From Mobula birostris (taxonomy: Eukaryota): 64,000 nt of DNA. Of this stretch, positions 24,560-63,928 are shown piece by piece (position 1 is the stretch's first letter; each line of letters opens with the position of its first letter). A program made the translations under genes and the position numbers. The notes under the pieces were generated by a model that worked only from the letters and a program-made list of their open reading frames with translations, was not told where the DNA came from and did not search any database. The stretch covers positions 29,966,206 to 30,030,205 of the forward strand of contig NC_092400.1 in assembly GCF_030028105.1 (NCBI RefSeq). Reading direction: 5' to 3'.

Positions 24560-26157
24560 CAGCAGTGCTAGAAAGTTTGTGAACACTGTAAAATTTTCTC
24601 TATTTCTGCACAAATATGATCTAAAATTTGATCAGATCTTCAGTAAGTCCTAAAACTAGATAAAGAGAACCCATTTAAATAAATAACACAAAAACATTAT
24701 CTTGTTCATTTATTTATTTATTGAGGAAAAAATGATCCAATATTACATGTATTTGTTGGAAAAAGTATGTGAACCTTTGCTTTCAGTAATTGGTGTGACC
24801 CCTCCCCATTGTACAGCAAATAACTTCAACCAAATGTTTCTGGTAACTGTTGGTTAGTCCTGCACATCAGTTTGGAGGAATGTTAGGCCAGTCTTCCTTA
24901 CAAAACTGCTTCAACACTAGGATGTTGGTGGGTATCCTTGCATGAGCTGCTTGCTTCAGGTCCTTCCACAACATTTCTTTAGAGTTAATGTCAGGACTTT
25001 GACTTGGCCATTCCAAAACACAAATTTTCTTCTTTTTAAGCCATTCTGTTGTTGATTTACTCTTGCCTTTCTGATCATTGTCCTGTTGCATTATCCAATT
25101 TCCATTAAGCTTCAGGTGATGGACTGCTACCCTGACATTCTCCTGTAAGATGTCTTGATACAATTTTGAATTCATTGTTCCCTCAATGATTGCAATCTGT
25201 CCAGACCCTGAGACAGCAAAGTAGTCCCAAACCATGCTGCTCCTTCCACCATGCTTCACAACTGGGATGAGTTTTGGTGTTGGTGTGCCATGTCCTTTTT
25301 CCTCCAAACATAGCAATGTGCATTTCTGCCAAAAAGTCCAACTTTGTCTCATCTGTCCACAGAACATTGTCCCAGAGGTGTTGTAGATCATTCAGGTGAT
25401 CTTTTGCAAACATGAGACAGGCAACTATATTTTTTTTGAAGAGCAGTGGTTTCCTTTATAATGTCCTTCCATGAACACCATTCTTGTTCAGTGTTTTTCT
25501 TAAAGTCAACACATGAACAGAGATTTCAGCAAGTTCTAGAGACTTCTGCAGGTCTTTTGCTGTTACCCTTGGATTTTTTTTTACCTCCTTCAGCATTGCA
25601 TGTTGTACTGTTAGTGTGATCTTTGCAGATTGCCCACTCCTGAGGAGTTTCCTCCATTTGTAGACAATTTCTCTTACTGTGGACTAATGAACACTCAAGT
25701 CTCTAGAAATGTTCTTTGTAGCCTTTTCCAACTTTGTGCATCTCTACAATTCTTCTTCTAAGATCCTCTGAAAATTGTTGTGATTGAGGCCTGCTGCACA
25801 TAAACAGATCTTTCTTGAGAAAAGCAGGCTCTGTCCGTTACCTGACTTTGTGTGTCTTTTTTATAGGGTAGGGGACCTCTACAACCCTCACCTCCAATCT
25901 CATCCCATTGATTGAAACAGCTGACTTTTGTAGAAAGGATTACCCCAGAGGTTCACATACTTGTCCCAACAAATACATGTAATACTAGAGCATTTTTCTC
26001 AACAAATAAATGAACAAGTATAATGTTTTTTGTGTTATTTATTTAATTGGGTTCTCTTTACCTAGTTTTAGGACTTACATGAGGATTTGATACATTTTAG
26101 GTCATATGCCCTAATAGTGATAATTCTACAGGAGTCACAAATTTTCTAGCACCGCTG
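24560..26157 (-). mobile_element. Tc1/mariner DNA transposon (DD34E, long TIRs), full length with frameshifted transposase
   Basis: TA TSDs 24558-59 and 26158-59; ~215-bp TIRs starting CAGC(A/G)GTGCTAGAAA; VLWTDETK, QQDND-(34 aa)-E with WPSQSPDIN; inserted in a CR1 fragment. Confidence 0.92.
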
Positions 26158-47485: not shown

Positions 47486-47586
47486 TAAGTGAGGATCTCT
47501 TCCGGGATTTTGAATGCCAAAATTTGGGACTGGGTAAATTGATTGGGTTAAAATTCCCGAAAGAAAGAGAAGGGCAAACAGCAGAA

Positions 47587-50500
47587 ATGAGGATTGAGGA
47601 ATTTCTAAAGGCGCCGACCTTGGAGGCATTAGAGGATGCCAGGAAATTAGAATTGGCGACTGTTGCAAAACGGTTGAATCTTTTTAAGGGGAAATTGACA
47701 ATGAGGAGAGTGGAGATGCACAGAGCTATCGTTGAGTATTATGTATCTAAAGGTGTGTTTCCCCACGGGGAGCTGAAGGTGATGTCTATGAGCAAACCTG
47801 GTGGAGAAGCAGTGCAGCTGCAGATGGAAAAATTGAGACTCGAGCACGAGTTCCGAGTCAAGCAGCTAGAATGAGAGGAAAGAGAGAAGCAATTAGAACG
47901 AGAAGAGAAGCAGTTAGAACGGGAGGAGAGAGTAAGGCAGTTAGAACAAGAGAGAGAGAAGGAAAGAGAGCTTGAGCTGGAGAAGTTAAGGATGGCGCTA
48001 GAGAGGGGCCAAATGCCGAACCAAGGTGGAAGGTTCAGGGCGGCCCAGGAGGTTAGGTTGGTTCCCCCATTTGAGGAGGCTGATGTTGATCGGTATTTTC
48101 TACATTTTGAAAAAGTCGCTGCAAGTCAGGACTGGCCGAGGGACAAGTGGGCTGTTTTGCTTCAGAGTGTACTTGAGGGGAAGGCTCAGTAAGCCTACTC
48201 CGCATTGTCAGCAGAAGAGGCCTAGAGATATGATGTGGTGAAAGAGGCTATACTCAGGATTTATGAGTTGGTCCCGGAGGCATACCGGCAAAGGTTCCGG
48301 AATGTGAGGAAGCAGTGGGGCTGCACGTATTTAGAGTTTGTCCGTGAGATGCAGATGTATTGTGAGTGTTGGTGCGCTTCGAAAGGGGTCACTGGCAATT
48401 ATGACAGATTGCTTCAGCTAATACTGATTGAGCAATTTAAAGGTTGTGTCCCTGAAGGTATGAGGCCCTATCTAGATGAGAAAGAGGCAGAAACCTTAGC
48501 CGCAACTGCTAAGTTAGCAGATGAGTACGCGTTAACACACAAAGCAAAGTTTACCCTGAGTAAGAGCTACCAGAAGGGTAATCGAAAGGGCAGAGAAAGT
48601 CCACCGGAAAAGCCAGAAAGTAAACTGGGGACTAGTGAGAAGGATAAGGAAGACAGGAAGCAGTTTGGTAGGAAGCCTCCTGGGGTCATATGCTATAATT
48701 GTGGGAAAGCCGGTCACTTTGCATCCAGGTGCTTTGCCCCAAAGAAGGAGACGGGGAAAGGAAAAACGACGACTCCGACTGGCTATATTGAGCCGGCAAA
48801 CAAACCGCTAGGGGAGAAGAGGTCTGATAGAGTTCAGGAAGGGTGCGAGAAGTTTATTTTGGCCAGGTTGGTGTCGGTGAAGGAGGGGTCAAACCCAGTT
48901 CCAGTACAGATCTGGAGAGACACTGGGGCTTGTTAGTCATTGATCTTAAGGAGGGTGTTAGACTTTGGTTCAGAGACCGAGATTGGGGAGGTCAGTGTGA
49001 TAAAAGGCATTGGGAAAGGGATGAAGCAGTACCTTTGCACCAGGTACACCTAAAAAGTGACTTGGTCTCCAGACTGGTCATGATAGGGATGAGGCCCGAA
49101 TTACGGATGGAAGACGTGGAGGTCTTACTCGGTAACGACCTTGCAGGTGGAGATGTGTACCCAGCAGTAAAGCTGACAAGCAAGCCTGCCAGGACTGAGG
49201 ACCCGCCCATGGACTCACAGGTTTATCCCGTTTGCGCAGTAACTCGGCGCATGTCGAGAAAGACTGCCGAAGCGAATGTAGATTTAGCTGAGACGTTTTT
49301 ACCAGCCTTATACCGGGAGGGGTTAGAAAGTGAGAAGAAGGAGCATAGTGGAGTGGAAGGAAGTGAGGGAGTTGAGGTAGATTTATCATTAGCGAGGAAG
49401 GAATTTATACAGGCACAGGAACGAGACGAGGAGCTGATGGTTTTGACGGAGACAGCTCTCCCCGAAGCAGAAATAAAAAGGGAACCAGTGGGCTATTATG
49501 TGAAGGAGGGAGTACTAATGAGGCAGTGGAGACCCCGTACCGTGCCCGCAGATGAGGAGTGGGGGGTGGTACACCAGGTGGTAGTGCCGAAAATTTATAG
49601 GGACAAGATTTTTAACCCGGCCCACAAGATACCCCTCGGTGGACATTTTTGGGTGAGGAAAACAGTCGGTAGAATTATGAATGAGTTTTACTTGCCAAAC
49701 ATGAGGAAGGATATTATTGAATATTGTAGACGTTGTCTGACGTCAGGTGGTAGAAAAGCCAAACCAGGTCCTGCCTAAAGTGCCCCTTCGACCGATACCC
49801 GCTTTCGGGGAACCTTTTTCACGAATAACTGTGGATTTTGTCGGTCCCCTGCCCAGAACTGCGAGTGGGCGAGAGTATGTGATGACTATGATGTGCGCTG
49901 CCACCAGGTTTCCGGAGGTGGTGCCCCTGGCAAGCATCAAGGCTCCCGCAGTGGTAAAGGCGCTTGTGAAATTTTTCACTATGGTGGGGCTGCCCAGGGA
50001 AATCCAGTCAGATCAGGGGAGTGTCTTCACATCTCACATATTCCGACGGATGTTGGATGAGATGGGAGCAAAGCAGATTTTGGCCTCCGCATACCACCCA
50101 GAGTCCCAAGGGGCGTTGGAAAGATTCCACGCAACATTAAAGACCATGATTAAAATTTATTGTCAAGAGAACGCTAGGGACTGGGATGATGCCTTGCCTC
50201 TTCTGGTATTTGCCGTAAGGGAAATGGTTCAGGTCATTGGGGTTCAGCCCATTTGAGCTCGTCTTTGGTCATCAGCGCAGAGGACCCCTGACCTTACTGA
50301 AAGAGCAATGGTCCAGTCCAGCAGTACAAGTCAATGTGATTGACTATGTTTTAAAATTTTGTGAGAGGCTTAAAAGGATCTGTGACCTTGCCAAAGAAAA
50401 TCTACAACATTCCCAAACTAAAATGAAACAGTGGTATGACAGATGTGCCCGCAAACAAGTGTTTCAAGTAGGCGATAGGGTCTTAGTTCTGTTTCCAGTG

Positions 50501-52155
50501 GTAACCAACCCCCTCCAGGTGAGATTCCACGGTCTGTGCAAAGTGATTAAAAAGATAGACTCTTTGAATTATGTCATCGAAACACTGGACAGACGTAAGC
50601 CAGCCCAATTAGTACACACTAATATGTTAAAAGCTTACCACGATCAGAAAGCAGATCTAGTTAGTGTTATCACGAAAATGAATGAGGCTGGGGTGCCAAG
50701 TGATAAGGGGAAAACCCATCTTGAAAAGATAAATATGGTGCCGACCAGATTGGAGAACTCTATTGTTTTGGCCAACTTTGCTGATAGGGTGTCTCACTTA
50801 AACCCCGAACGGAGCAAGCTGCTGATAAAGCCAATTAACCCGCATGCAGATGTATGTCCCGAGGCGATGCAAGGGTATGGTACATGATGTTGTTGTCACA
50901 TCAGACCAGCCTATTAAGCAACACCCCTATAAGATGAACTTGGAGAAGGGCAAGCTAGTGGAGAAAGAAATTGAACACATGCTAGCCACATATATTATTA
51001 GGCCATCCAAATTGGAATGGGCGTCTCCGTGTGGTTGTCCCGAAAGTCAGTGGGAGCATACGATTCTGTACAGATTACAGAAAAGTGAACTCCATCACAA
51101 AAACTGATGCTTATCCCATCCCAAGGGTAGACGATTGCATCGATAAAGTGGGGAGAGCTAAGTACATCACAAAGATCGATTTGCTAAAAGGGTACTGGTG
51201 CGTTCCTTTAACCGACCGGGCTAGAGAAATCTCAGCATTTGTGACTCCATCCGGGTTATATGAGTATAATGTTTTACCTTTTGGCATGAAAAACGCCCAG
51301 GGACCTTCCAAAGGATGATTAATTCAGTGATAAAAAGGTTAAAGAATGCAGGAGCATATATTGACGATTTAGTGGTCTGGAGTGACACGCGGGAGGAGCA
51401 CATTGTGGTAGTAGAGAAACTGTTTAAACGGCTGTCTGAAGCCAACCTGATAGTGAACCTCGCAAAAAGTGAGTTCGGCCACGCTAAGGTCACTTATCTG
51501 GGGTATGTGGTAGGATAGGGGCAGCTGGTACCGATGCAGGCTAAGGTGCAAGCTATCTCTGGAGTTCCCATCCCGACAGACAAGAGAGCCCTGAGAAGGT
51601 TCTTGGGGATGGTGGGGTACTATCGGAAGTTCTGCAAAAACTTTGCGGATATTACCCTCCCTCTTACTAAGCTCTTGCCGAAGAATGGGAAGTTTGTGTG
51701 GAACGTCTTTGTCAACAAGCCTTCGAGAGTCTGAAGGCGATTCTGTGTCACCACCCTGTATTGAATGCGCCTGACTTTTCAAAACCCTTCTCCCTAGCAG
51801 CAGATGCTAGCGACGAAGCGGTAGGTGAGGTACTGTTGCAGACAAAGAGGAGATTGAACACCCAGTGGCTTATTTTTCTAAGAAGTTTAATGTCCATCAG
51901 AGAAATTATTCCACTGTGGAGAAGGAATTACTGGCAATCATACTAGCATTACAACATTTTGAGGTTTATATTTGTCCGGCACGGAAACCACTGATAATTT
52001 ACACTGATCACAATCCATTAGTGTTTTTGGCCACAATGAAGGATAAAAACAAATGCTTACTAAGTTGGAGCCTGGTCTTACAGGAATTTGATATTAAGAT
52101 AAAACATATAAAAGGAACGGACAATGTGATTGCTGATTGTCTGTCAAGGTGTTAA
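47587..52155 (+). pseudogene. gag-pol of the Gmr1-type element, with multiple stops and frameshifts
   Basis: SCAN-like capsid (YELVPEAYRQRFR...LILIEQF), CCHC knuckle CYNCGKAGHFASRC, protease RDTGA, integrase VDFVGPLP/SDQGS/ERFH, RT YPIPRVDD/KIDLLKGYW/YIDD, RNase H DASD/EKELLAI/TDHNPL/ADCLSR. Confidence 0.93.
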
Positions 52156-54806: not shown

Positions 54807-55112
54807 TCATTTAATGATCTGGAAGTCCGAATAGTCCCGCTGCTGGGTCCGCTTCTGGTTGGTGAATTCAGCCTTCTCTATGCGGGACCTCGGGCTGCCC
54901 GTCTTGCTAAGCCAAGTCTGCATGGCCCTCACCGGCTCATCGGCACCCTGCAGTTGTCCCTTAACTGTTCCTCTTTCGGTGTTCTGCACCCAACCCACCA
55001 GGCCCAGCCGCTTCGCCTCTTTCTGCGTATGTTTGCGGAAGAAGACTCCCTGCACCTTGCCGAACACTTCATAATCCACCGAGACAAGATGCCCCTGACC
55101 ACCCGACGACAT
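54807..55112 (-). CDS. acyp1: Acylphosphatase (ACYP1-like), 101 aa, intronless CDS
   Basis: MSSGGQGHLVSVDYEVFGKVQGVFFRKHTQ...GLVGWVQNTERGTV...GSP...DYSDFQIIK; catalytic Arg (FFR) and Asn (VQN) intact; Kozak GCGACCATG. Confidence 0.92.
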   Translation of the reverse strand: MSSGGQGHLVSVDYEVFGKVQGVFFRKHTQKEAKRLGLVGWVQNTERGTVKGQLQGADEPVRAMQTWLSKTGSPRSRIEKAEFTNQKRTQQRDYSDFQIIK

Positions 55113-55450
55113 GGTCGCAGAAGCTGAGACTATCGTGGTCCTTAGCAACCGCCACATCCACCCAAGAACAGCCTTCTGGGAATGATAGCACCCGGTAGCG
55201 TGTGGAACTACCGATCCCGACACCCCTCATGTCTAGTTCGCGCAGTCGCAAGACTAGAGGTGCGGGATATTTGAAACTGGAATAAAATATGAAAACGATC
55301 TCAGACGTGAAAATTGTTTGCGGCACTAAATGAAAGGGGGTGGGGTCTTGAGTCAACGTAACGAGTGATAGACCTGGCCGGGATAGATGGAAACATCCGG
55401 AAAGTCTTAAAGTGAAATATAGAAAACGCGACATTTTAAACAGCGAAGCG
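55113..55450. promoter_or_regulatory. CpG promoter of acyp1-like with two ZNF143-type motifs and an RFX X-box-like site
   Basis: GCTATCATTCCCAGAAGGC (55171-55189, -), ACTACCGATCCCGACACCC (55207-55225, +), GTGGTC-CTT-AGCAAC (55135-55149); CpG-dense. Confidence 0.65.
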
Positions 55451-56513
55451 TGAATTTGGATTATATGTTTTAGAATGATATATATTATTGTGATCTTCAC
55501 TAAGCCTAGATTCTTGTTCCCTCAGTTGGTCCAAAGGTTAAAAAAAATAGGAAAATGCATTTGCTGAAAAGGCAAAATAAAATCAGAAAAGTACTGGAAA
55601 TCTCAGATCAGTGATTATGAGAAGACAAACAGTTAATATTTCAGGTCCATCTATAAAACAAATTGCAGATTTGGAGAGAAGAAAAGGAATGTCTGATAAG
55701 GTGTGTCTGCGTGTGTAAACAGGGAAGTGAATGAGGATAAAAGAGAAAAATATGAAAAAAAATCAACATCCTGGAATTGTGAAAAGCTAATTAGAACAGT
55801 TGCTGGAAGTCTTAAGGCAATACTGGAAATAATCAACAAATCAGGCAGTATCTGCAGAGAAAGTAAAGCTGAGTTAATGTCACAGATTGATGATCTGAAA
55901 GGATTAAATGCTGAATTCAACTGTGAGGCCTACAAAGTGTCTAAACTGATGATGAGGGGCAGTACCTTGAGCTTATGTTAGGCTTTGTTGGAACAATTTA
56001 GGAGGCCAATGGCAGATATGTTGGAGAGGGAGTAGGATCTGGAATTATGGTGATTGGCAATTGGAAACTCAGGAGCACTCTTGTGGATTGATTAGAAGGG
56101 TTGAGGAAAATGTCATTTGGAATCTCTTTGCCTTCATTCCATCATGGACAGGTCTAATTGTTTTAGGGTGATATTGTTAATGACTTTCTTGTGCCATCAT
56201 TGTATGTCGCTATCTGTTTCTAAGAAAATTATTAACAATGTTCAAAATCTAGGGCTTAATTTTACTTAGACCTCTTGAAAGGGATTTTTATCTTTATTAG
56301 ACTTTAAGTTATAAATACTTGACATCATAGAACAAACATCCCTATGGTTGAAAGTAAACAAAATAAATTAGAACTGTTTGAAGGAAAATAAAATTACAAA
56401 ATTATTAATAGCAAATAATTTTACAGTATTTATATAAGAATGAAACAAAATGATTTGATAAATGATCACTGTAGAGCCAGAAGCTTTAAAACATTTTAGT
56501 ACATTCAGTAGAG

Positions 56514-56519
56514 TTTATT
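56514..56519 (-). terminator. Candidate polyadenylation signal of the FIIND-CARD gene
   Basis: AATAAA about 120 nt after the stop codon. Confidence 0.4.
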
Positions 56520-56637
56520 ATTGGAGAGATGAAACCTAGATTCTTATGTTATAATTCTAACAAAGAATACATTTCACTGGTGGAGTAAAGCTGATCATCA
56601 GATAGCTTCAGTTATATTGCATATCTGCAAAACTAAT

Positions 56638-57095
56638 TTATGAAAAATTGTGGCCAAGTAAATAACCTACAATCATACCACTGAATATACAAACCAAATG
56701 AGCCAGCCATGTACTTAATATTTTGTTATTAATATCCTTTACAGTTAAACTATCATCCTGTAAACAAGCTAAACTCCATTGTTTTAAACAGTTGTTACAT
56801 AATTTGTCTGAATAATTACATCCCACTTCATTCACAAAACAAGGATTATTTTCAAGTAGTATATTGTACAGTTCTTCTTCTGCTTCTTCTCCCCTTTTCA
56901 TTATTAGTTGAACTAGGGCTCTATTTTGTTGAACCTCTGTAATATGAGAGCCAACCTCACGCTCTTCATTTATGTTAATAACATTTTTGAGTCGCAGCTG
57001 TGACCAGATTGGTTGAGTCATTTTAAGACAATAAATAATTTCCTTTTTATGTCTTCGTACAAAATCCACACCTTTCTTCAATTTTTTAAACATAT
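56638..57095 (-). CDS. NLRP1/CARD8-like protein, last exon: CARD, Cys-rich linker and C-terminal transmembrane helix
   Basis: ttttatctccag| phase 1; VDFVRRHKKEII...NRALVQLIMKRGEEAEEELYNILLENNPCFVNEV (ASC/NLRP1-type CARD pattern), then ILSTWLAHLVCIFSGMIVGYLLGHNFS*. Confidence 0.82.
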
Positions 57096-57751
57096 CTGGA
57101 GATAAAAGATGAATTATCAATGGAAGTTAGAGAAATATAGGTGATTTATACTAACTACTACTTGCATTTTAAATTTCTGATTTGGTAGCTATATTAATTT
57201 TTGTTTGTTATTTTTTGGTGTTCAGATTTTCCACAGTCATTCATATATGACTGGATATTTGCTTGCATTGCTCAAGAGAAAGGCAGAAAAACAAATATCT
57301 ATCAATTGAGGATGTTCGGATTAGTACCTTCATTTCTGTACATTACAAAATAGGAAACCTATAAGATCTTGGGGACTGTGGTTGGACCCCAGATCTAACC
57401 CAGAGCTCAGAATTATTTATTGGATCCGCAAGGTGATCAGGTAGGTTAGAATTATAATGCCCTGGGGATAAACTCCTATTTTCACATTCATGTTACATAT
57501 AATACTTTCTAGTGGACATATTTCCTTGCATCAATGCTGGCTGCATCTTGGAAAACCAGACTATGAGAAAGGGGTCTCACAGACATTTGACTCATATTAA
57601 CAAAGCAAGGATTATTTGTGATTCAGGCATGATAAATACTTTGCAGATCTCCTGAAGAAAGAAAGCATGTAACTGCTTCAGTACATTCATATTAGCTTGT
57701 TTATGAGTTCAGTAGAAATTGTCATTTGTAAATAAATTTCTATAGCTTGTC

Positions 57752-58050
57752 ATAGAAACATAGAAAACTTACAGCACAATATAGGCCCTTCGACCCACAA
57801 TGCTGTGCCGAACATGTACTTACTTTAGAAATTAACTAAGGTTACCTTTAGCCCTCTATTTTTCTAAGCTCCATGCACCTATACCAGGAGTCACTTAAAA
57901 GACGCTATTGTATCCGCCTCCACCATATTCGCCGGCAGCCCATTCTATGCACTCACCACTCTGTGTAAAAAAACTTACCCGACATCCCCTCTGTACCTAC
58001 TTCCAAGCACCTTAAAAATGTGCCTGATCTATTAGCCATTTCAGCCCTTT
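57752..58050 (-). mobile_element. CR1-clade LINE 3' end
   Basis: Homologous to 1127-1440. Confidence 0.8.
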
Positions 58051-59298
58051 AACAATGAAGTATAAAATTCATATTTAATTTTGAAACTGACCCAATCATG
58101 CATGCTTGTATTTTTTGTCGTACTTTAGGTCCTTACTGTGTGTTTACAGTGCAGAAATAGACCATTTGGCTAGAATCAGCTATAAATGCATATATATATA
58201 TATATATACACACACAGAGCTAGGATGCCTAAGATTTGCGCTGTACTATATTTGTTGAGGTGGAGCAGAGAGCGAGTTTGTCAATCTGACGGGAGCAAAG
58301 GAGGTTGGGAATGGTGAGGGTAGATCTCTGCAGGAGGGCTGTGGGTCAGGTGGCAGAGAAGGAGTGCCAGGGCTGGGAGTTGGGGGGAGCTGTAGCACAA
58401 ATGCAGACACACCCAGCCCTGAGACACCCAGCTAGGTCATTTGATTCCAAACAAATGGTTTATTGATTATTACAAAATATTTCTCTGGTGTTTCCTGATT
58501 TCTCTACTCTCCCTTCCCCTTTTCCCAACCATGATTCCCTTTTCCCTGCCCATTCTCACTCTCAGCCCACAATGGAGGCCCATATCAGAATCAGTTTTAT
58601 CATCGCTCAAATATGTCATGAAATTTGCTTTTTGTGTGGTAGCAGTACAGTGCAACACATAAAATTACCACAGTACTATGCCAAAGTCTTAGGCAGCCTA
58701 GCTATATATATGCCTAAGACTTTTGCACAGTACTTCCATTCTTTTCCCTAATGTGTGTTTATCTAGATACCCTTTAATTTATTGACTCTAGTTCTCTTAA
58801 CTTATGGTAGAGCTCCAGTTTCTAATCATTCTCTGGGAAAAGAGACACCTCCTGAAATAGTGGATTTACTCATGACGATTTAAGTTATTGACCCCAAATC
58901 TGGTTTCCTGTAAGGGAGGTTCCTTCTTTAGGCCAACAGTGTTAAGTACTTTTTACAAAAAAAACTCACTAATATACAGTATAGCCAGTTTTGTTTAATT
59001 CCTTTTATACAAGCATGGTGCAGAGAACAATTCTACTGATCTTCAATCATTTGCTATTAAAACTATTTCAGAAATAATTCTGTAATCCTGGCTCACTGTA
59101 AGCCTTGATTTTCACCTTTAACAAGTATTTTTATTTCTATTACATGACAATGCCATGGAAAATCTAAACTACATTGTATTACACATGACTTGTCTTCAAG
59201 ATAAACCACATTAGCACCTATCTGATATACATTTATTTTATGTATCAATGAAATAAAATACATTCATTTAACCATCAGAATATTATGCACTGACTTAC

Positions 59299-59440
59299 CC
59301 GGTTTTATCAGTAATTCCCATAAAACAGCGATTTTATTTTTCTCTGTCAAACTTAGTTTAATACTGTAGTTCATATCTGTGCAATTCACTTCATAAAATG
59401 GTTGCTTTAGATTATACCTGAAGTAGCAGAATTTTATATC
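59299..59440 (-). CDS. NLRP1/CARD8-like protein, FIIND UPA C-terminal exon
   Basis: 142 bp, tttttaatgacag|DIKFCYFRYNLKQPFYEVNCTDMNYSIKLSLTEKNKIAVLWELLIKP+G|gtaagt; cf. NLRP1 ELELCY...QLFSEFY...[22 protein letters not shown]. Confidence 0.88.
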
Positions 59441-60523
59441 CTGTCATTAAAAAGAAATTTGGTAAATTGGATTGACAGGAAATTATTTTTAATCATTGTA
59501 CACTGGGTTATAGTGGCAACAATGGTAAATACAAGGAATTTGAAAAAGGACATTGAACGTTGTATCCAACATAAAATGCTCATTTTTTTTGCTGTTCATG
59601 ACAAGTCAACGTCATGATTAAATCTAGGAAATCAAAACAGTAAATTTGTCTTATTGTCAGCAATGTGTGTATTTTTCTAACATCATTAATTATTTCTTTA
59701 ATTACACTTAAATGCCCACTGTAAAGTTATAAGGTCAATTTTAATCTTACAAGTCACATGAAATTATCAAGACTTAACCTCTGGCTTATGCTGGAGTAGC
59801 TGATCTGATGTTGGATAATGGGAGCCACAGTTAGCACAGAATGGGATGACTCGGCCCAAGTTCCAACCTTGTGCCATCTTATCTTAGGTATAACAAAATT
59901 TAACTCACACAATCTTCAGGTCCTGCTGCAGTTATGAAACATTTTCCTTAAAGTCTGGTTAACAATTTCAAAATGTATAATGAGTCATAGGTGTGATTAT
60001 CAAGAACAACTGATAAAAGTGATGGAAGTTGTCATGATGGGAGTGAAGATATGTTAGCAGGGAAAAGAGTATAACCCCTTGTAAGAAACCAAAATATTCA
60101 ATGCAGTCATGCCGACAAATTGTGCAGTTTAGATTCAACATGTTACAGCAGATACAACTAAAAGACATGTATATTTTAGCTAGAAATTAATGAATTATAA
60201 ATGACTTGTCTGCAAAATTTGGTAGTAAGGAATACAATGGAAGTAAATCATTCAGCTGAACCTTAAAATTATGTAGGCACTGGAGGTTCTCAGACTTTCT
60301 TTTCAAAATATAATCAAAAGAATGTGGAATAGATTTCCATGCAAATAAATTAATCTAAAATGCATAGCTGTACAATTATATAGTAAGGAACAAACATACT
60401 GTATATATGTGGCTAAGGAGAGGAGGCAGGGGGCATTTAAAAAGTAAACAATGCCAATTTATTATACATTCATTAAGCATAACTCAAGTATTTTAAGTAA
60501 AGGAAAGCTTAAATCCTCCAAGA

Positions 60524-60790
60524 GAACCACAACCTTGTCATGGTTTGGATGCTTGTGTGCCACTATGACCTGGAGAGCTAGGTTGGCCGGAGTCAGGGCT
60601 TTATGTATTGGCTCTTGGTAGGGTCACCCATACCAAATAGGTCAGACTAAGAGTGAGCCACCAGTCCTCCAGGTTTAGGGGTACAGCCTAGAGCTAACAA
60701 CCCTGATTGGTAAAACAAAATTGTTATGGAAACAGCAGTGAACAATCCTTCTACGTCTGAGTGCAATGGTATTGTTGAGTTGTAATGGCG
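60524..60790 (+). mobile_element. RTE-like retroelement 5' fragment
   Basis: accttgtcatgg...agagcta...ggtagggtcaccca...aggtc resembles RTE/Expander 5'UTRs (recalled). Confidence 0.45.
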
Positions 60791-61483
60791 TAATGCAGTG
60801 GCATAGAAGTAACAAAGCTTAAATAGTAAAGCAATGAATATTTTTTGTGTCGAAATGCTGATAGGATTAAAAATGTTATTAAGTCTTTGGAACTGATAAG
60901 GGTTTTAAAGTTGAACTCAAGACAGAAAAGCTTGATTTATAGATAAGAAGGGGACAAAGGGATGTAAGGTAAGTGCAAAAAAAGTAGCATTGAGGTGAAA
61001 GAACAGTCATGATCTTTTTGAATGGTAAAGCAGGAATGAAGGACTAAATGGCCTACTCTTGCTTCTGTGTTCCTATGTACCTAATACTTCTTACTCGTTC
61101 TAGAATTTTGCATATAGCAGAAGTATCCAAAGAGTCATAAAGGTAAATCTGCAACTAGAAAAGGAGCACAATTACACTTAGTATACGATAAGTTAAGGAA
61201 ACATTAAAAATTAAAACTGAGAAGGCAAGCAAAAAAAAAGCTATTACAGAATGAATGTTGAATTTTTAATGTTCTGATGTTACATAAATTATTCTGTAAT
61301 AATTTTATTCATCAACTGTGTCATGATCAATCAGCTGGTGTCACCATTAAATATGCTATTAGTGTTGATAGAAGAAGTAGTGAACTTGATATGTATGCTG
61401 TAAAATATTGTAAATAATATAAAATAATATTGTACATAAATAATTATAAAATAGTTAATTTTGAACATTTTAATCCTACTTAC

Positions 61484-61606
61484 TGATGGTGTTATTGTCA
61501 CATTTGCACAGGATGTGAGCTTGTATTTCTTGCCATAGGTGAGGGTGATTATTTGTGGTCTTTGAATTTTCATTGATTTTATATTGTTTTCATGCAAGTC
61601 AACTGC
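61484..61606 (-). CDS. NLRP1/CARD8-like protein, FIIND UPA middle exon
   Basis: 123 bp, ttttttgtatttcag|AVDLHENNIKSMKIQRPQIITLTYGKKYKLTSCANVTITPS|gtaagt; cf. NLRP1 AIDDLEMKFQFVRIHKPPP..LYMGCRY...EILPK. Confidence 0.88.
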
Positions 61607-63671
61607 CTGAAATACAAAAAAGCTAAGATTTTTGGTCTGTAAAGTAAAAAAGTACTTTTTAAAGTGAATAACATGAATCAATACCATTTTTTCTATAGCA
61701 CCGTCACCATGAAGAATCTGAATATGCACAGTTTAATAGCATTAAATATATTATGATCAGTCCACTTAATCAATGTATACAATAATTAAAATATGAAATA
61801 AGGCTATTTGTAAGCTGAATGAGGCTAAATTTAATTTAAAAAACAACTGTAGATACTGGAAATGTAAAACAAAGAAAGAAAATGTTGCAAGTATGCAGTG
61901 GAGAGTGTTTCAAAAACTGTGTCAGAAATGAAAAATAAGGATAACCTAAACAAATGTTCTCATTTAATATTGTTCTGGACCATATATTTTAGGAATATTG
62001 ACCATATATTAGGTTCTCTGTACTTATCCCCTTTCCTGGTAGTAGATAAGAAAATGCTTAGAGTTTTATGTGGAATCAGTTCTCTTATTTGCCCTATATT
62101 CTCACATGTTCACTGGCATCTATCTGGAAGCTGGGATATCTGTTAATGAGTTATTAAATATGGTAATATATTCAAGTCTCATTCTACTTCATCTTTTCTG
62201 GTGGCTATGCGCAAGCAGATGAGTGGTTGAATTAAAACTTTTTAAAAAATCTTTCCATTCTTATCATTATCAAATCCCAAACACATATGATCCTCTGGAT
62301 AAAAATACTACTACTTTGTACTCCACAACCAATCTTCCCAAAACAAAAATGAAAAATGCCGCAAATACTCAGCATGACAGAGTGAGAAAAGAAATACATA
62401 GATGACCATGAGGATAACAAGGTGAGACGGGCAAAGTTTAAACCTTCAAAGGACATTTATGAGATGTTTTTGCTTACATAGAAAGTGGTAGGTGCCTGGA
62501 ATTACTGCCAGGGGAAGTGGTGGAAACACATATGATAGCAACATTTAAGAGGGATTTAGAGACACACAAACAAGTAGGAACTGAAGGGATATAGACCATG
62601 TGCAGGCAGATGGGATTAGAAGGTCTGAGGAACTAAATAGCCTACTTCTTCCCTTAATAATGTATGCTTGTATATAAATGCAACATACTACAAATTCCAG
62701 AAATCTGAACAGAAATTTCAGGAATTGTTCAGGTGATATCTGTGGAAAGGTCATTAGCCTAAAATATTATCTCATTACCCCAGAACTTGATCAGTGCAGA
62801 AAGCAGAAAGGCCCATTTCTGTGCTGTACTGTTCTATATTCTATCTTATTCTTTTAAACTCTGTGAAATGCAGATACTTACGTGATGTAATCTAAACAAA
62901 TGCCTAGATTGATATGAACCAGCACTGTGTACAATTTTCTTTCAAAACTCATGCATTTAATTAATATTAACACCTAAAATCATTACAGAATCATAATTAA
63001 AATAATAAATTCTATTGTTCTTTCTTGTGGGTGTAAAAACTCATTTAAATTAATCTGTTTATGAATATAATGTCATATCTATCCTCGAGTTCTTAACCCA
63101 TTCTGGAATCCACATGGAGCCCAGATGTGCAATGTAACCAGGAAATCACCAGAAAAACTGATTGAGTTTTGGGATTTCTGTATTCATGTGGCATATGCAA
63201 GTGCAATGGGAAATGTAGGTATTTCCAGAAAACACCAATGTTTGTGTGACATTAATATGTATAAATTGGAAGCCATGCTTCCTACACTGCAAATAAAACA
63301 CTTCACTGGCTGCAAAGAAATGAAATGTCTTGAGATTTTTTAAGCAAGGATTACTCAATATGGCTTGATAGTAAAGATTTCAGATGACTTTTCCTCCCAT
63401 TGTTCTGATGAAATTTAAAACTAATTATATTGACATAAAAAGGAGTCAAACGAGGGAAACTTTTGGGTTTATTTGGCCTACTTTCACACAGTATGACACT
63501 TACTAATCAGGCCTAGTAACCAGGCCATAATCATAATTGGTGAAGAATTTATTGAAGGAATTTGAAAATATTTGAGTTCCAAGATTTTATTATATACTAA
63601 ATGGAAATTAACACACTTACTTTAAAAATCAAAGATGGCTACTCTTCCTTATATTAAAATTTATTCATTAC

Positions 63672-63928
63672 CTGTATTAATGCTGAATCATTTGGTAGCA
63701 AATACACGTGGAAGTTTGAAGAATCGGCTTGGAGAGTCTGATATATTAATATGATAGCATGCACAGGCACTTGGCAAACTTGACACAGGATAACACCCAT
63801 AATGGTAAGAGGCTGATTTCTTAATATAGCATGAGATAAAGTCACTTCTGATGGAATTTCCAGGAAGAAAATATTATTTCTGAAACATGCAATGTTGTAT
63901 ACTGCAGAGTACATAGCCTCTCTTGAAC
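63672..63928 (-). CDS. NLRP1/CARD8-like protein, FIIND ZU5/UPA junction exon (upstream exons outside the window)
   Basis: 257 bp, atttttag| phase 1, SREAMYSAVYNIACFRNNIFFLEIPSEVTLSHAILRNQPLTIMGVIL...ILIYQ...FHVYLLPNDSALIQ|gtaatg; cf. NLRP1 AHFKEEGMLLEKPARV..HIVLENPSFSPLGVLL...FHLYLIPSD. Confidence 0.88.

What the first reader, a model, noticed from the sequence alone, without database searches (positions are those of the whole stretch)
56638..63928. Membrane-anchored FIIND-CARD protein: NLRP1/CARD8-like gene with a C-terminal tail anchor
Seen: four exons (63928-63672, 61606-61484, 59440-59299, 57095-56638) with canonical GT-AG sites splice in frame into FIIND(ZU5 end/UPA)-CARD. After the CARD comes a Cys-rich linker (GCNYSDKLCNNCLKQWSLAC), a ~22-residue hydrophobic segment ILSTWLAHLVCIFSGMIVGYLLG with a GxxxGxxxG glycine zipper, and a 4-residue tail HNFS*. 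Known: mammalian NLRP1 and CARD8 end at or just after the CARD and are soluble, and their freed UPA-CARD polymerises to recruit ASC/caspase-1; CARD-plus-TM proteins such as MAVS and CARD19 lack FIIND. Inference: a chondrichthyan organelle-tethered UPA-CARD scaffold or decoy, combining inflammasome-sensor and MAVS-like topology. The non-basic tail suggests ER more than mitochondria. I do not know of a described FIIND-CARD-TM architecture.
Basis: partly seen in the sequence, partly recalled or inferred. Interest (0 to 1): 0.85.

Follow-up and report, generated by a model that had tools for sequence, protein, structure and literature searches.

The report
Shark-and-ray CARD8-like protein with membrane tail
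A stingray gene for a CARD8-like danger-sensor protein carries an extra water-repelling tail, shared with catsharks, that probably pins it to an internal cell membrane, an arrangement I found in no paper.

Summary
Four minus-strand exons with AG/GT borders are open in the stated frames. Searched one by one, they match the end of ZU5/FIIND, the UPA subdomain in colinear order, and CARD.

- **Splicing:** a 2153-letter contig from a related animal's run joins exons 2, 3 and 4 at these borders. It runs through the hydrophobic tail and the stop codon.
- **Conservation:** the 67-residue extension after the CARD aligns without gaps to predicted proteins of a stingray (60 of 67 identical) and two catsharks (37 of 67; 14 and 13 of the last 16). 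The chimaera relatives seen end at the CARD.
- **Rarity:** of 60 CARD relatives among 1.84 billion representatives, only the catshark cluster covers the tail.
- **Membrane helix:** likely, not proven. Two hydropathy measures favour it and a third is borderline.
- **Self-cleavage site:** it is altered.

My reading is an intact FIIND-CARD tethered to a membrane. Its role is untested. It is a new variant of a known family: database models exist, but my searches found no description.

The parts
63672..63928 (-). Exon 1 seen in the window. It encodes the last part of the ZU5 subdomain, the degenerate self-cleavage site and the first UPA strand. The gene continues upstream, beyond the window end.
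   Evidence: Open in frame +2 with AG before and GT after. Pfam FIIND 89-126/131 and UPA 1-31/117. PDB NLRP1/CARD8 E 7.8e-8 to 4.9e-5. 62 of 83 identical to catshark P0001.
63804..63812 (-). Codons P-L-T at the place of CARD8 S295-F296-S297 (the SF|S self-cleavage motif).
   Evidence: HMMER alignments to 7jkq_B, 6x6c_E and 7crw_A. Residue roles come from passages of PMC3210808.
63885..63887 (-). Cys codon at the place of CARD8 His-270, which is needed for autoprocessing.
   Evidence: Alignment. His-270 is described as crucial in PMC3210808.
61484..61606 (-). Exon 2, middle of UPA.
   Evidence: Pfam UPA 34-73/117. Piece 61483-61609 of contig record 1 of run X1.
59299..59440 (-). Exon 3, end of UPA.
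   Evidence: Pfam UPA 76-114/117. Piece 59301-59439 of the same contig, adjoining exon 2 and exon 4 pieces in the record.
56842..57066 (-). CARD (residues 10-84 of the exon 4 product).
   Evidence: Pfam CARD E 1.1e-11. AF2 block means pLDDT 86-97 for residues 11-90 and 81 for 1-10. Best structural match is the CARD8 CARD filament 6xkj_A, TM 0.92, rmsd 0.8.
56722..56841 (-). Post-CARD linker (residues 85-124), with a conserved N-Y-S-D-K-L-C-x-N-C-x-K-x-W-S-L-A block followed by a variable stretch.
   Evidence: 17 of 26 (residues 85-110) and 4 of 14 (111-124) identical to catshark P0001, with no gaps. AF2 predicts helix, with pLDDT 56-64.
56653..56721 (-). Hydrophobic helix (residues 125-147), the putative tail-anchor membrane segment, with G-x3-G-x3-G.
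   Evidence: KD19 maximum 1.85. Octanol-scale sum -9.7. Additive translocon-scale sum +1.4 to +1.85, borderline. Last 16 residues of the protein 14 of 16 identical to catshark. AF2 helix with pLDDT 76-83.
56638..56652 (-). Four-residue end H-N-F-S plus the stop codon.
   Evidence: The stingray model P0066 ends in the same way.
56434..56637 (-). 3' untranslated stretch covered by the spliced contig of run X1.
   Evidence: table 8. All 19 gap letters of that piece lie here, at 56446, 56525 and 56580.

Best explanation
This is the 3' part of a real, expressed CARD8-like gene (ZU5-UPA-CARD, apparently without NACHT-LRR) of a stingray. In sharks and rays its last exon runs 67 codons past the CARD, where relatives stop. 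The extension encodes a partly conserved helical linker and a C-terminal hydrophobic helix that ends 4 residues (ray) or 9 residues (catshark) before the stop.

Most likely the helix is a tail anchor, inserted after translation. The whole ZU5-UPA-CARD would then face the cytosol from an internal membrane. An ER-type membrane is likelier than mitochondria, because the end carries no basic residues.

The FIIND self-cleavage site is degenerate. The protein therefore probably stays in one piece and does not work by the NLRP1/CARD8 route of N-terminal degradation and release of UPA-CARD.

I infer that it acts as a fixed, membrane-bound CARD module. It could be clustered through its glycine-zipper helix. 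It would hold CARD partners at the membrane: caspase-1 or ASC-type CARDs, or freed C-terminal fragments of the canonical self-cleaving paralogue. A brake is somewhat more likely than a trigger.

Shown: the exons, the splicing, the domains, conservation of the tail, and the altered cleavage residues. Inferred: membrane insertion, which membrane, lack of cleavage, the partners, and the direction of the effect.
For: **Exons and domains:**

**Splicing and transcript:**
- Contig record 1 of run X1 (2153 letters) lies on 61483-61609, 59301-59439 and 56434-57097 with adjoining record coordinates (1230-1356, 1357-1495, 1496-2142).
- X1 has no depth in the unique intron bins, whereas X2 covers all 30 bins.
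- All 19 gap letters of the exon 4 piece are in the 3' UTR.
- None of the 15 listed coding differences makes a stop. The two in the hydrophobic helix that change a residue are L to I and A to V.

**Conservation:**
- Window against Hemitrygon akajei P0066: 142 of 151 identical.
- Window against catshark P0001: CARD 67 of 84, post-CARD 37 of 67 without gaps, last 16 residues 14 of 16.

**Rarity:**
- 1 of 60 representative hits covers the tail. The other 59 alignments end at query residue 84-97.
- 3 of 66 stored proteins have a hydrophobic C-terminus, and all three are these orthologues.

**Helix and hydropathy:**

**Cleavage residues:**

**No NACHT-LRR:** the catshark models are 432 and 843 aa and have none.

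**Capture by uncleaved forms:** full-length FIIND proteins capture freed C-terminal fragments, according to the abstract of PMC11760013.
Against: - No dedicated membrane-protein predictor was available.
- The additive translocon-type sum is positive (+1.4 to +1.85). The catshark helix reaches only KD19 1.55, under the classical 1.6.
- Hydropathy misleads within this same protein. The first UPA strand scores higher (KD19 2.05-2.31) than the tail.
- Between close ray relatives the tail shows 6 non-synonymous and 2 synonymous changes (ratio 0.68), against 0.19 for the CARD. The counts are tiny, and up to 2 differences of that piece are unlisted.
- A Leu-Thr or Leu-Ser junction could still self-cleave. 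Ser is kept in catsharks, and Glu-279 and His-252 are kept.
- X1 is labelled RNA only as a guess, and it comes from a relative, not from this animal.
- The N-terminus of the window's gene lies outside the window.
- Only three annotated species, this window and two coded runs show the tail.
Confidence: 0.5

Rival explanations
1. It is a membrane-bound activating platform. The altered junction (Leu-Thr or Leu-Ser) still self-cleaves, or another protease cuts the protein. The UPA-CARD that remains anchored then polymerises on the membrane surface and activates caspase-1, in a MAVS-like topology.
For: - The CARD is strongly conserved (67 of 84 ray against catshark; pN/pS 0.19).
- It superposes on the CARD8 CARD taken from a filament.
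- Ser or Thr is kept at the nucleophile position, and Glu-279 and, in catshark, His-252 equivalents are kept.
- The conserved G-x3-G-x3-G could drive clustering.
Against: - The His-270 equivalent is Cys, and the Phe-296 and Ser-295 equivalents are replaced. H270 is described as crucial, and F296H as severely defective, in CARD8.
- Only about 40 residues separate the CARD from the membrane. By inference, that may hinder a long filament.
Confidence: 0.22
2. The C-terminal hydrophobic helix is not a membrane anchor. It would be a soluble protein-protein element, for example a glycine-zipper self-association helix or a helix that packs back on the FIIND or CARD to regulate it.
For: - Hydrophobicity is borderline on two of three measures.
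- The helix contains S, T, H, Y and three G.
- Only its C-terminal half is sequence-conserved (2 of 11 identical in the N-half).
- The hydrophobic UPA strand shows that high hydropathy occurs in buried non-membrane parts of this protein.
Against: - The position at the extreme C-terminus, the length of about 23 residues, the basic residues just before it and the uncharged short end fit a tail anchor (sequence).
- The N-half keeps its hydrophobic character although its sequence differs.
- The octanol-scale sums are -8.3 to -9.7 in all four sequences.
Confidence: 0.2
3. The tail has no function. It would be read-through into a former 3' UTR, a mis-annotation or a decaying gene.
For: - A 67-codon open run is not rare in this window (6% of positions), and hydrophobic ends occur by chance (8 of 244).
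- The tail's pN/pS between close relatives is 0.68.
Against: - The alignment is gap-free and the end point nearly the same in ray and catsharks: 37 of 67 identical overall and 14 of 16 at the end.
- The frame is intact in two further relatives.
- A transcript-like contig covers the tail.
- The exons upstream are open and conserved.
Confidence: 0.04

Closest known systems
CARD8 (and the FIIND-CARD end of NLRP1)
   Same: The order ZU5-UPA-CARD is the same. They are the best solved-structure relatives by sequence: catshark orthologue against rat NLRP1 5.8e-40, CARD8 6.4e-38 and human NLRP1 2.1e-34, and window exon 1 at 7.8e-8 to 4.9e-5. The CARD model fits the CARD8 CARD at TM 0.92. There is no NACHT-LRR in the catshark models, as in CARD8.
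   Different: There is a 67-residue extension after the CARD, with a C-terminal hydrophobic helix. The self-cleavage motif S-F-S reads P-L-T (ray) or P-L-S (catshark), and His-270 reads Cys. The other 59 of 60 CARD relatives end within about 13 residues of the CARD.
Callorhinchus milii FIIND-CARD proteins (A0A4W3JMI4 = P0004; CARD8-like XP_007900105 = P0028/P0062)
   Same: They have the same FIIND-CARD architecture. P0004 shares the P-L-T junction and 46 of 84 CARD residues with the window.
   Different: Both end right after the CARD. P0004 keeps the His, and P0028 keeps an intact S-F-S. I could not check whether the P0004 model is complete at its 3' end.
MAVS and CARD19 (BinCARD-2)
   Same: Each has a CARD displayed on the cytosolic face of an organelle by a C-terminal membrane segment. 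This is recalled. For CARD19 I saw only search listings and abstract starts, which call it a mitochondrial protein.
   Different: They have no ZU5-UPA. Their CARD is N-terminal, and no sequence relation to this tail was found. No MAVS or CARD19 sequence was compared here.
UNC5CL / UNC5 receptors (membrane-bound ZU5-UPA-death-fold proteins)
   Same: A ZU5-UPA module followed by a death-fold domain is attached to a membrane. This is recalled; one search gave only listings.
   Different: Their anchor is N-terminal to the ZU5, and the death-fold domain is a DD, not a CARD. They were not compared by any search here.

Membership tests
FIIND-CARD proteins (NLRP1/CARD8 family) | ZU5-like subdomain | tested here: met
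   Only its last ~40 residues lie in the window: Pfam FIIND 89-126/131, E 0.002, below the cut-off for one exon alone. The exon 1 product matches NLRP1 and CARD8 chains at E 7.8e-8 to 4.9e-5. The full ZU5 is present in catshark orthologue P0001.
FIIND-CARD proteins (NLRP1/CARD8 family) | UPA subdomain directly after ZU5 | tested here: met
   Pfam UPA-FIIND positions 1-31, 34-73 and 76-114 of 117 lie on exons 1, 2 and 3 in order. Each exon alone is below the 27-bit cut-off (25.4, 18.1 and 20.5 bits).
FIIND-CARD proteins (NLRP1/CARD8 family) | CARD after the UPA | tested here: met
   Pfam CARD 45 bits against a cut-off of 23.9. Fold match to the CARD8 CARD.
FIIND-CARD proteins (NLRP1/CARD8 family) | S-F|S self-cleavage motif with Ser nucleophile | tested here: not met
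   The window reads P-L-T and the catshark reads P-L-S at CARD8 295-297. S297 is required and F296H is severely defective (PMC3210808 passages). Thr or Ser at the nucleophile place leaves cleavage possible.
FIIND-CARD proteins (NLRP1/CARD8 family) | Conserved His-252, His-270 and Glu-279 that support autoprocessing | tested here: inconclusive
   His-270 is Cys in the window and in catsharks. Glu-279 is kept. His-252 is kept in catshark but lies outside the window.
FIIND-CARD proteins (NLRP1/CARD8 family) | Binding and restraint by DPP8/9 | not tested
I did not map them.
Tail-anchored membrane proteins | A single hydrophobic helix of about 20 residues within about 30-40 residues of the C-terminus | tested here: inconclusive
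   For: KD19 1.85 (ray), octanol sums -8.3 to -9.7, and an AF2 helix. Borderline: KD19 1.55 in catshark and a translocon-type sum of +1.4 to +1.85.
Tail-anchored membrane proteins | No signal peptide or other membrane segment upstream | tested here: inconclusive
   The window lacks the N-terminus. In catshark P0001 the maximum KD19 of windows starting at residues 1-12 is -0.08. The only other peak is the buried first UPA strand.
Tail-anchored membrane proteins | Post-translational insertion with the N-terminus in the cytosol | not testable with these tools
   This needs cell fractionation or insertion assays.
MAVS-like CARD signalling platforms | CARD polymerisation on an organelle surface that activates downstream signalling | not testable with these tools
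   This is a resemblance of topology only, and no homology was tested.

The most novel reading that the evidence does not exclude
Sharks and rays have kept, since their common ancestor, an inflammasome-family protein that works without FIIND self-cleavage. It would be a tail-anchored ZU5-UPA-CARD that clusters through a glycine-zipper membrane helix. It would form an organelle-bound CARD platform or checkpoint for caspase-1 signalling. That would be a third way of using a FIIND-CARD module, beside NLRP1 and CARD8, and would link inflammasome sensing to a membrane as MAVS links RNA sensing to one.
Probability: 0.25. Interest if true: 0.8.

Novelty: new variant of a known kind. Interest (0 to 1): 0.6.

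Why it matters
NLRP1 and CARD8 are understood as soluble sensors. They fire when their N-terminal part is degraded and a pre-cleaved UPA-CARD fragment is set free.

A conserved relative that is fixed to a membrane, and has probably lost self-cleavage, would show that the FIIND-CARD module can be used in another way. It would also give a natural test case for three questions:
- What does an uncleaved FIIND do?
- Can CARD assembly be controlled by membrane tethering?
- How did inflammasome regulation look in early jawed vertebrates?

The practical gain is modest. The three public models are named automatically as 'NLRP1a-like', 'CARD8-like' and 'uncharacterized', and those names do not mention the tail.

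Tried and rejected
**Searches that gave little**
I could not read the ray or catshark gene upstream of the window end, nor the chimaera DNA after its stop codon.
- More tail-bearing orthologues: a search with catshark P0061, residues 688-843, scored nothing. Its own cluster representative is shorter than the length window, so this blank says little. Searches with P0001 residues 277-432 and with the whole of P0066 returned only the same two clusters.
- ESM Atlas with residues 88-151 gave no usable hit.
- Foldseek against the PDB gave no match at E 0.001 or below. The best was 1.5e-3, and the top rows are all CARDs.

**Ideas rejected**
- A zinc-binding four-Cys linker. Only 2 of the 4 Cys are kept in catsharks.
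- Glycosylation of the conserved N-F-S end. By recall it lies too close to the membrane for the oligosaccharyl transferase. This was not tested.
- A chance ORF or a pseudogene, because of the conservation and the intact frames.
- The stingray model P0066 as evidence for a natural UPA-CARD-only protein; it starts at the Met two residues after the would-be cleavage site. It is more likely a truncated model. Window exon 1 stays open and is 62 of 83 identical to catshark across that point, and the X1 contig has 1229 letters upstream of exon 2.

**Papers**
- One search was badly posed. Requiring 2 of 6 terms let elasmobranch-only papers fill the list, so it shows nothing.
- Searches found no description of a membrane-anchored FIIND-CARD. 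I read passages of PMC11258412, PMC3210808 and PMC12436146, and the abstract of PMC11760013. All other papers were seen only as listings.
- Supplementary files were not opened. Supplementary alignments of vertebrate FIIND proteins could hold such sequences.

**Organism**
- It was not named by any tool. The window is 94% identical in this exon's product to Hemitrygon akajei, so I take it to be a related stingray.
- The shark-ray divergence time is recalled, not computed.

Full report
**What is in the sequence.** Exon 63672-63928 reads in frame +2, 61484-61606 in frame 0, 59299-59440 in frame 0 with one base left over, and 56638-57095 in frame +2, ending in a stop. Every exon is preceded by AG, and the first three are followed by GTAATG, GTAAGT and GTAAGT. 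The window holds no N. The gene runs off the window end, so its 5' part cannot be seen.

**Domains, exon by exon.** Each product was searched alone, and the joined search or fold of the window's own model was left out.
- Pfam: exon 1 matches FIIND positions 89-126 of 131 (E 0.002) and UPA-FIIND 1-31 of 117 (E 2.2e-5). Exon 2 matches UPA 34-73 (E 0.0041). Exon 3 matches UPA 76-114 (E 0.0007). Exon 4 matches CARD at residues 10-84 (E 1.1e-11, 45 bits, cut-off 23.9).
- The single-exon FIIND/UPA scores are under Pfam's cut-offs. They are nevertheless colinear along one profile.
- The exon 1 product alone finds rat NLRP1, human NLRP1 and human CARD8 chains at E 7.8e-8, 2.5e-7 and 4.9e-5.
- An AlphaFold2 model of the exon 4 product (38-row alignment, mean pLDDT 83) shows CARD helices; the 10-residue block means are 86-97 for residues 11-90. 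One long helix follows over residues 100-150, with pLDDT 56-83.
- The model's best structural match is the CARD8 CARD from its filament, 6xkj_A (TM-score 0.92 on the target, rmsd 0.8 Å over 81 columns). No row reached E 0.001.

**Splicing and expression.** No run of this animal itself was offered. Eight coded runs were listed, and two of them hold part of the stretch. I laid four runs on 56400-61700.
- Run X1 carries one 2153-letter contig, at depth 24, on the minus strand. Its record positions 1230-1356, 1357-1495 and 1496-2142 lie on 61483-61609, 59301-59439 and 56434-57097.
- Exons 2, 3 and 4 are therefore joined with nothing between them. The offsets of one to three bases are the letters shared by the exon end and the intron end.
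- The contig runs through the hydrophobic tail and the stop, and about 200 letters into the 3' UTR.
- X1 has zero depth in the unique intron bins. X2 covers all 30 bins at depth about 7, so it behaves as genomic DNA. The tool labels X1 as RNA only as a guess. A processed DNA copy cannot be formally excluded, but the coverage pattern is that of a transcriptome.
- Both runs come from relatives, not from this animal. The X1 exon 4 piece has 24 other letters and 19 gap letters over 664 letters.
- All 19 gap letters are accounted for by three indels in the UTR (1 + 13 + 5, at 56446, 56525 and 56580). The coding frame is therefore intact. The X2 contig over the exon has no gaps.
- Of the 15 differences listed for X1 inside the exon 4 coding part (at most two more are unlisted), 6 are synonymous and 9 are not, and none makes a stop. 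In the hydrophobic helix there are two synonymous changes plus L to I and A to V.
- The 1229 letters of the contig upstream of exon 2 leave room for exon 1 and about 970 further letters. If the contig is complete, that is too short for a NACHT-LRR.

**Relatives.** I ran a full HMMER search of the exon 4 product against 1.84 billion representatives.
- It gave 60 hits at E 0.001 or better. Only one, P0001 (432 aa), aligns over all 151 residues, at 69% identity and E 7.4e-61. In the other 59 the alignment ends at query residue 84-97.
- P0001 is XP_072343775.1 of Scyliorhinus torazame, named 'NLRP1a-like'. Its 90% cluster also holds XP_038675825.1 of S. canicula (P0061, 843 aa, 'uncharacterized'), which has the same C-terminal 430 residues behind a long N-terminal region.
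- A word-indexed search added P0066, a 283-aa 'CARD8-like' model of the stingray Hemitrygon akajei.
- The window is therefore from a related stingray. This is inference, since no tool named the organism.
- Two further searches found no more clusters. The first of these blanks is uninformative because of the length window.
- Two Callorhinchus milii (chimaera) relatives end right after the CARD. One is P0004, which shares this clade's junction. The other is P0028/P0062, a CARD8-like protein with an intact S-F-S.

**The tail.** In the alignment, counted, the window and the catshark proteins align without a single gap from the CARD to the N-F-S end.
- Against P0001 the identities are: CARD 67 of 84; post-CARD 37 of 67; first linker block (85-110) 17 of 26; variable stretch (111-124) 4 of 14; N-terminal half of the hydrophobic helix 2 of 11; last 16 residues 14 of 16.
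- The conserved pieces are a block around a C-x-x-C pair and the G-x3-G-x3-G half of the helix together with H-N-F-S.
- Only 2 of the ray's 4 linker cysteines are kept in catsharks, so I dropped the idea of a four-Cys metal site.
- Catsharks carry five more residues after N-F-S.
- Sharks and rays separated, by my recollection, some hundreds of millions of years ago. An unconstrained 3' UTR would have lost both frame and similarity over that time.
- Within this window, staying open for 67 codons has a chance of about 6%, and 8 of 244 long stop-free segments end equally hydrophobic. Conservation, not the ORF, carries the argument.

**Is it a membrane helix?**
- For:
  - The Kyte-Doolittle 19-residue maximum is 1.85 in the rays.
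  - Octanol-scale sums are -8.3 to -9.7 in all four sequences. Only one other of 67 proteins falls under -5 in its last 60 residues: P0007 at -6.6, a multi-CARD protein.
  - A confident long helix is predicted.
  - The helix sits at the extreme C-terminus, basic residues lie just before it, and it carries a conserved glycine zipper.
- Against, or borderline:
  - The catshark helix reaches only 1.55.
  - A plain additive translocon-type sum is +1.4 to +1.85.
  - The first UPA strand of these same proteins scores higher than the tail (2.05-2.31), although it is a buried strand in the solved relatives. Hydropathy alone can therefore mislead here.
- I put the tail-anchor reading at about two in three. 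If it is right, the moderate hydrophobicity and the uncharged end point to an ER-type route rather than to mitochondria or peroxisomes. That step rests on recalled general rules of tail-anchor sorting and is inference.

**The self-cleavage site.** Passages of D'Osualdo et al. 2011 (PMC3210808) state the following for CARD8:
- Ser-297 is required for autoprocessing.
- F296H is severely defective.
- S295A has a small effect.
- His-252 and His-270 are crucial.
- E279A reduces cleavage.

In the HMMER alignments, CARD8 S295-F296-S297 faces P-L-T in the window and P-L-S in catsharks. His-270 faces Cys in both. Glu-279 is kept. His-252 is kept in catshark and lies outside the window. The chimaera P0004 has P-L-T but keeps the His, while the canonical P0028 keeps S-F-S and the His.

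I did not test its claim about DPP9 contacts. A hydroxyl residue remains at the nucleophile place, so cleavage is unlikely rather than excluded.

**How it most likely works.**
- Shown: a ZU5-UPA-CARD protein with a conserved C-terminal hydrophobic helix and an altered cleavage site. The CARD is conserved (pN/pS 0.19 between close rays), and the tail evolves faster (0.68, tiny counts).
- Inferred: the protein is inserted by its tail, stays in one piece, and presents its CARD at a fixed place.
- Full-length, uncleaved FIIND proteins take part in complexes that hold freed C-terminal fragments in check (abstract of PMC11760013). A permanently uncleaved, anchored copy could act as a brake on the canonical paralogue or on caspase-1 or ASC CARDs.
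- The rival is an activating, MAVS-like platform. Neither can be decided here.

**What is known.**
- The sequences exist in public protein sets under automatic names.
- Searches for FIIND with 'tail-anchored' (0 papers), FIIND with 'cartilaginous' (1 paper, unrelated), CARD8 with 'shark' (27 papers, 15 of them listed; the one relevant paper was read in passages), NLRP1 with 'elasmobranch' (1 paper, unrelated) and two broader sets gave no description of a membrane-anchored FIIND-CARD.
- A 2025 review of fish NLRs gives the order of NLRP1 domains as ending in FIIND and CARD, and its single use of 'transmembrane' is in a general list of motifs (passages).
- Subscription journals and supplements were not searched.
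- The scan's own notes hold nothing on this gene outside this window.

**Verdict.** This is a new variant of the CARD8/NLRP1 FIIND-CARD family, conserved in sharks and rays. Membrane anchoring is plausible but unproven, and the function is open.

Noticed in passing
window 63740-63803 (first UPA strand); P0001 residues 144-162, P0066 residues 1-19: The strand right after the degenerate cleavage site is unusually hydrophobic in this clade. KD19 is 2.05-2.31 in the ray and catsharks, 1.67 in chimaera P0004, and under 1.4 in the canonical chimaera CARD8-like P0028. In NLRP1 and CARD8 this is, by recall, the new N-terminus that enters DPP9.
   Followed up: partly
P0066 (Hemitrygon akajei RefSeq model): The model starts at the Met two residues after the would-be cleavage site, so as annotated it encodes UPA-CARD-tail only. 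It is probably truncated, since window exon 1 is open and conserved upstream of that Met. An internal start has not been excluded.
   Followed up: partly
window 54807-55223 (-): An intronless ORF with a complete acylphosphatase domain (Pfam PF00708, E 9.4e-25, positions 2-85 of 85) lies 1.4 kb downstream of the CARD gene's stop. It may be a processed retrocopy or a single-exon gene.
   Followed up: no
window 47524-50887 (+): Remnants of an LTR-type retroelement: a SCAN-like gag with a zinc knuckle, an integrase zinc-binding domain and an integrase core domain, on ORFs in different frames. It is broken. I only described it.
   Followed up: no
window 57639-58877 and 60471-60824: Intron stretches with depth in the thousands to hundreds of thousands in all four runs laid. 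These are high-copy repeats shared among the related animals.
   Followed up: no
window 24867-25391 (-): An ORF with a DDE_3 transposase domain (E 4.2e-8), a Tc1/mariner-like remnant.
   Followed up: no
P0061 (Scyliorhinus canicula model), residues 1-410: There is a long, acidic N-terminal region with no aligned counterpart in the 432-aa S. torazame model. It could be a real CARD8-like disordered N-terminus or a model fusion.
   Followed up: no
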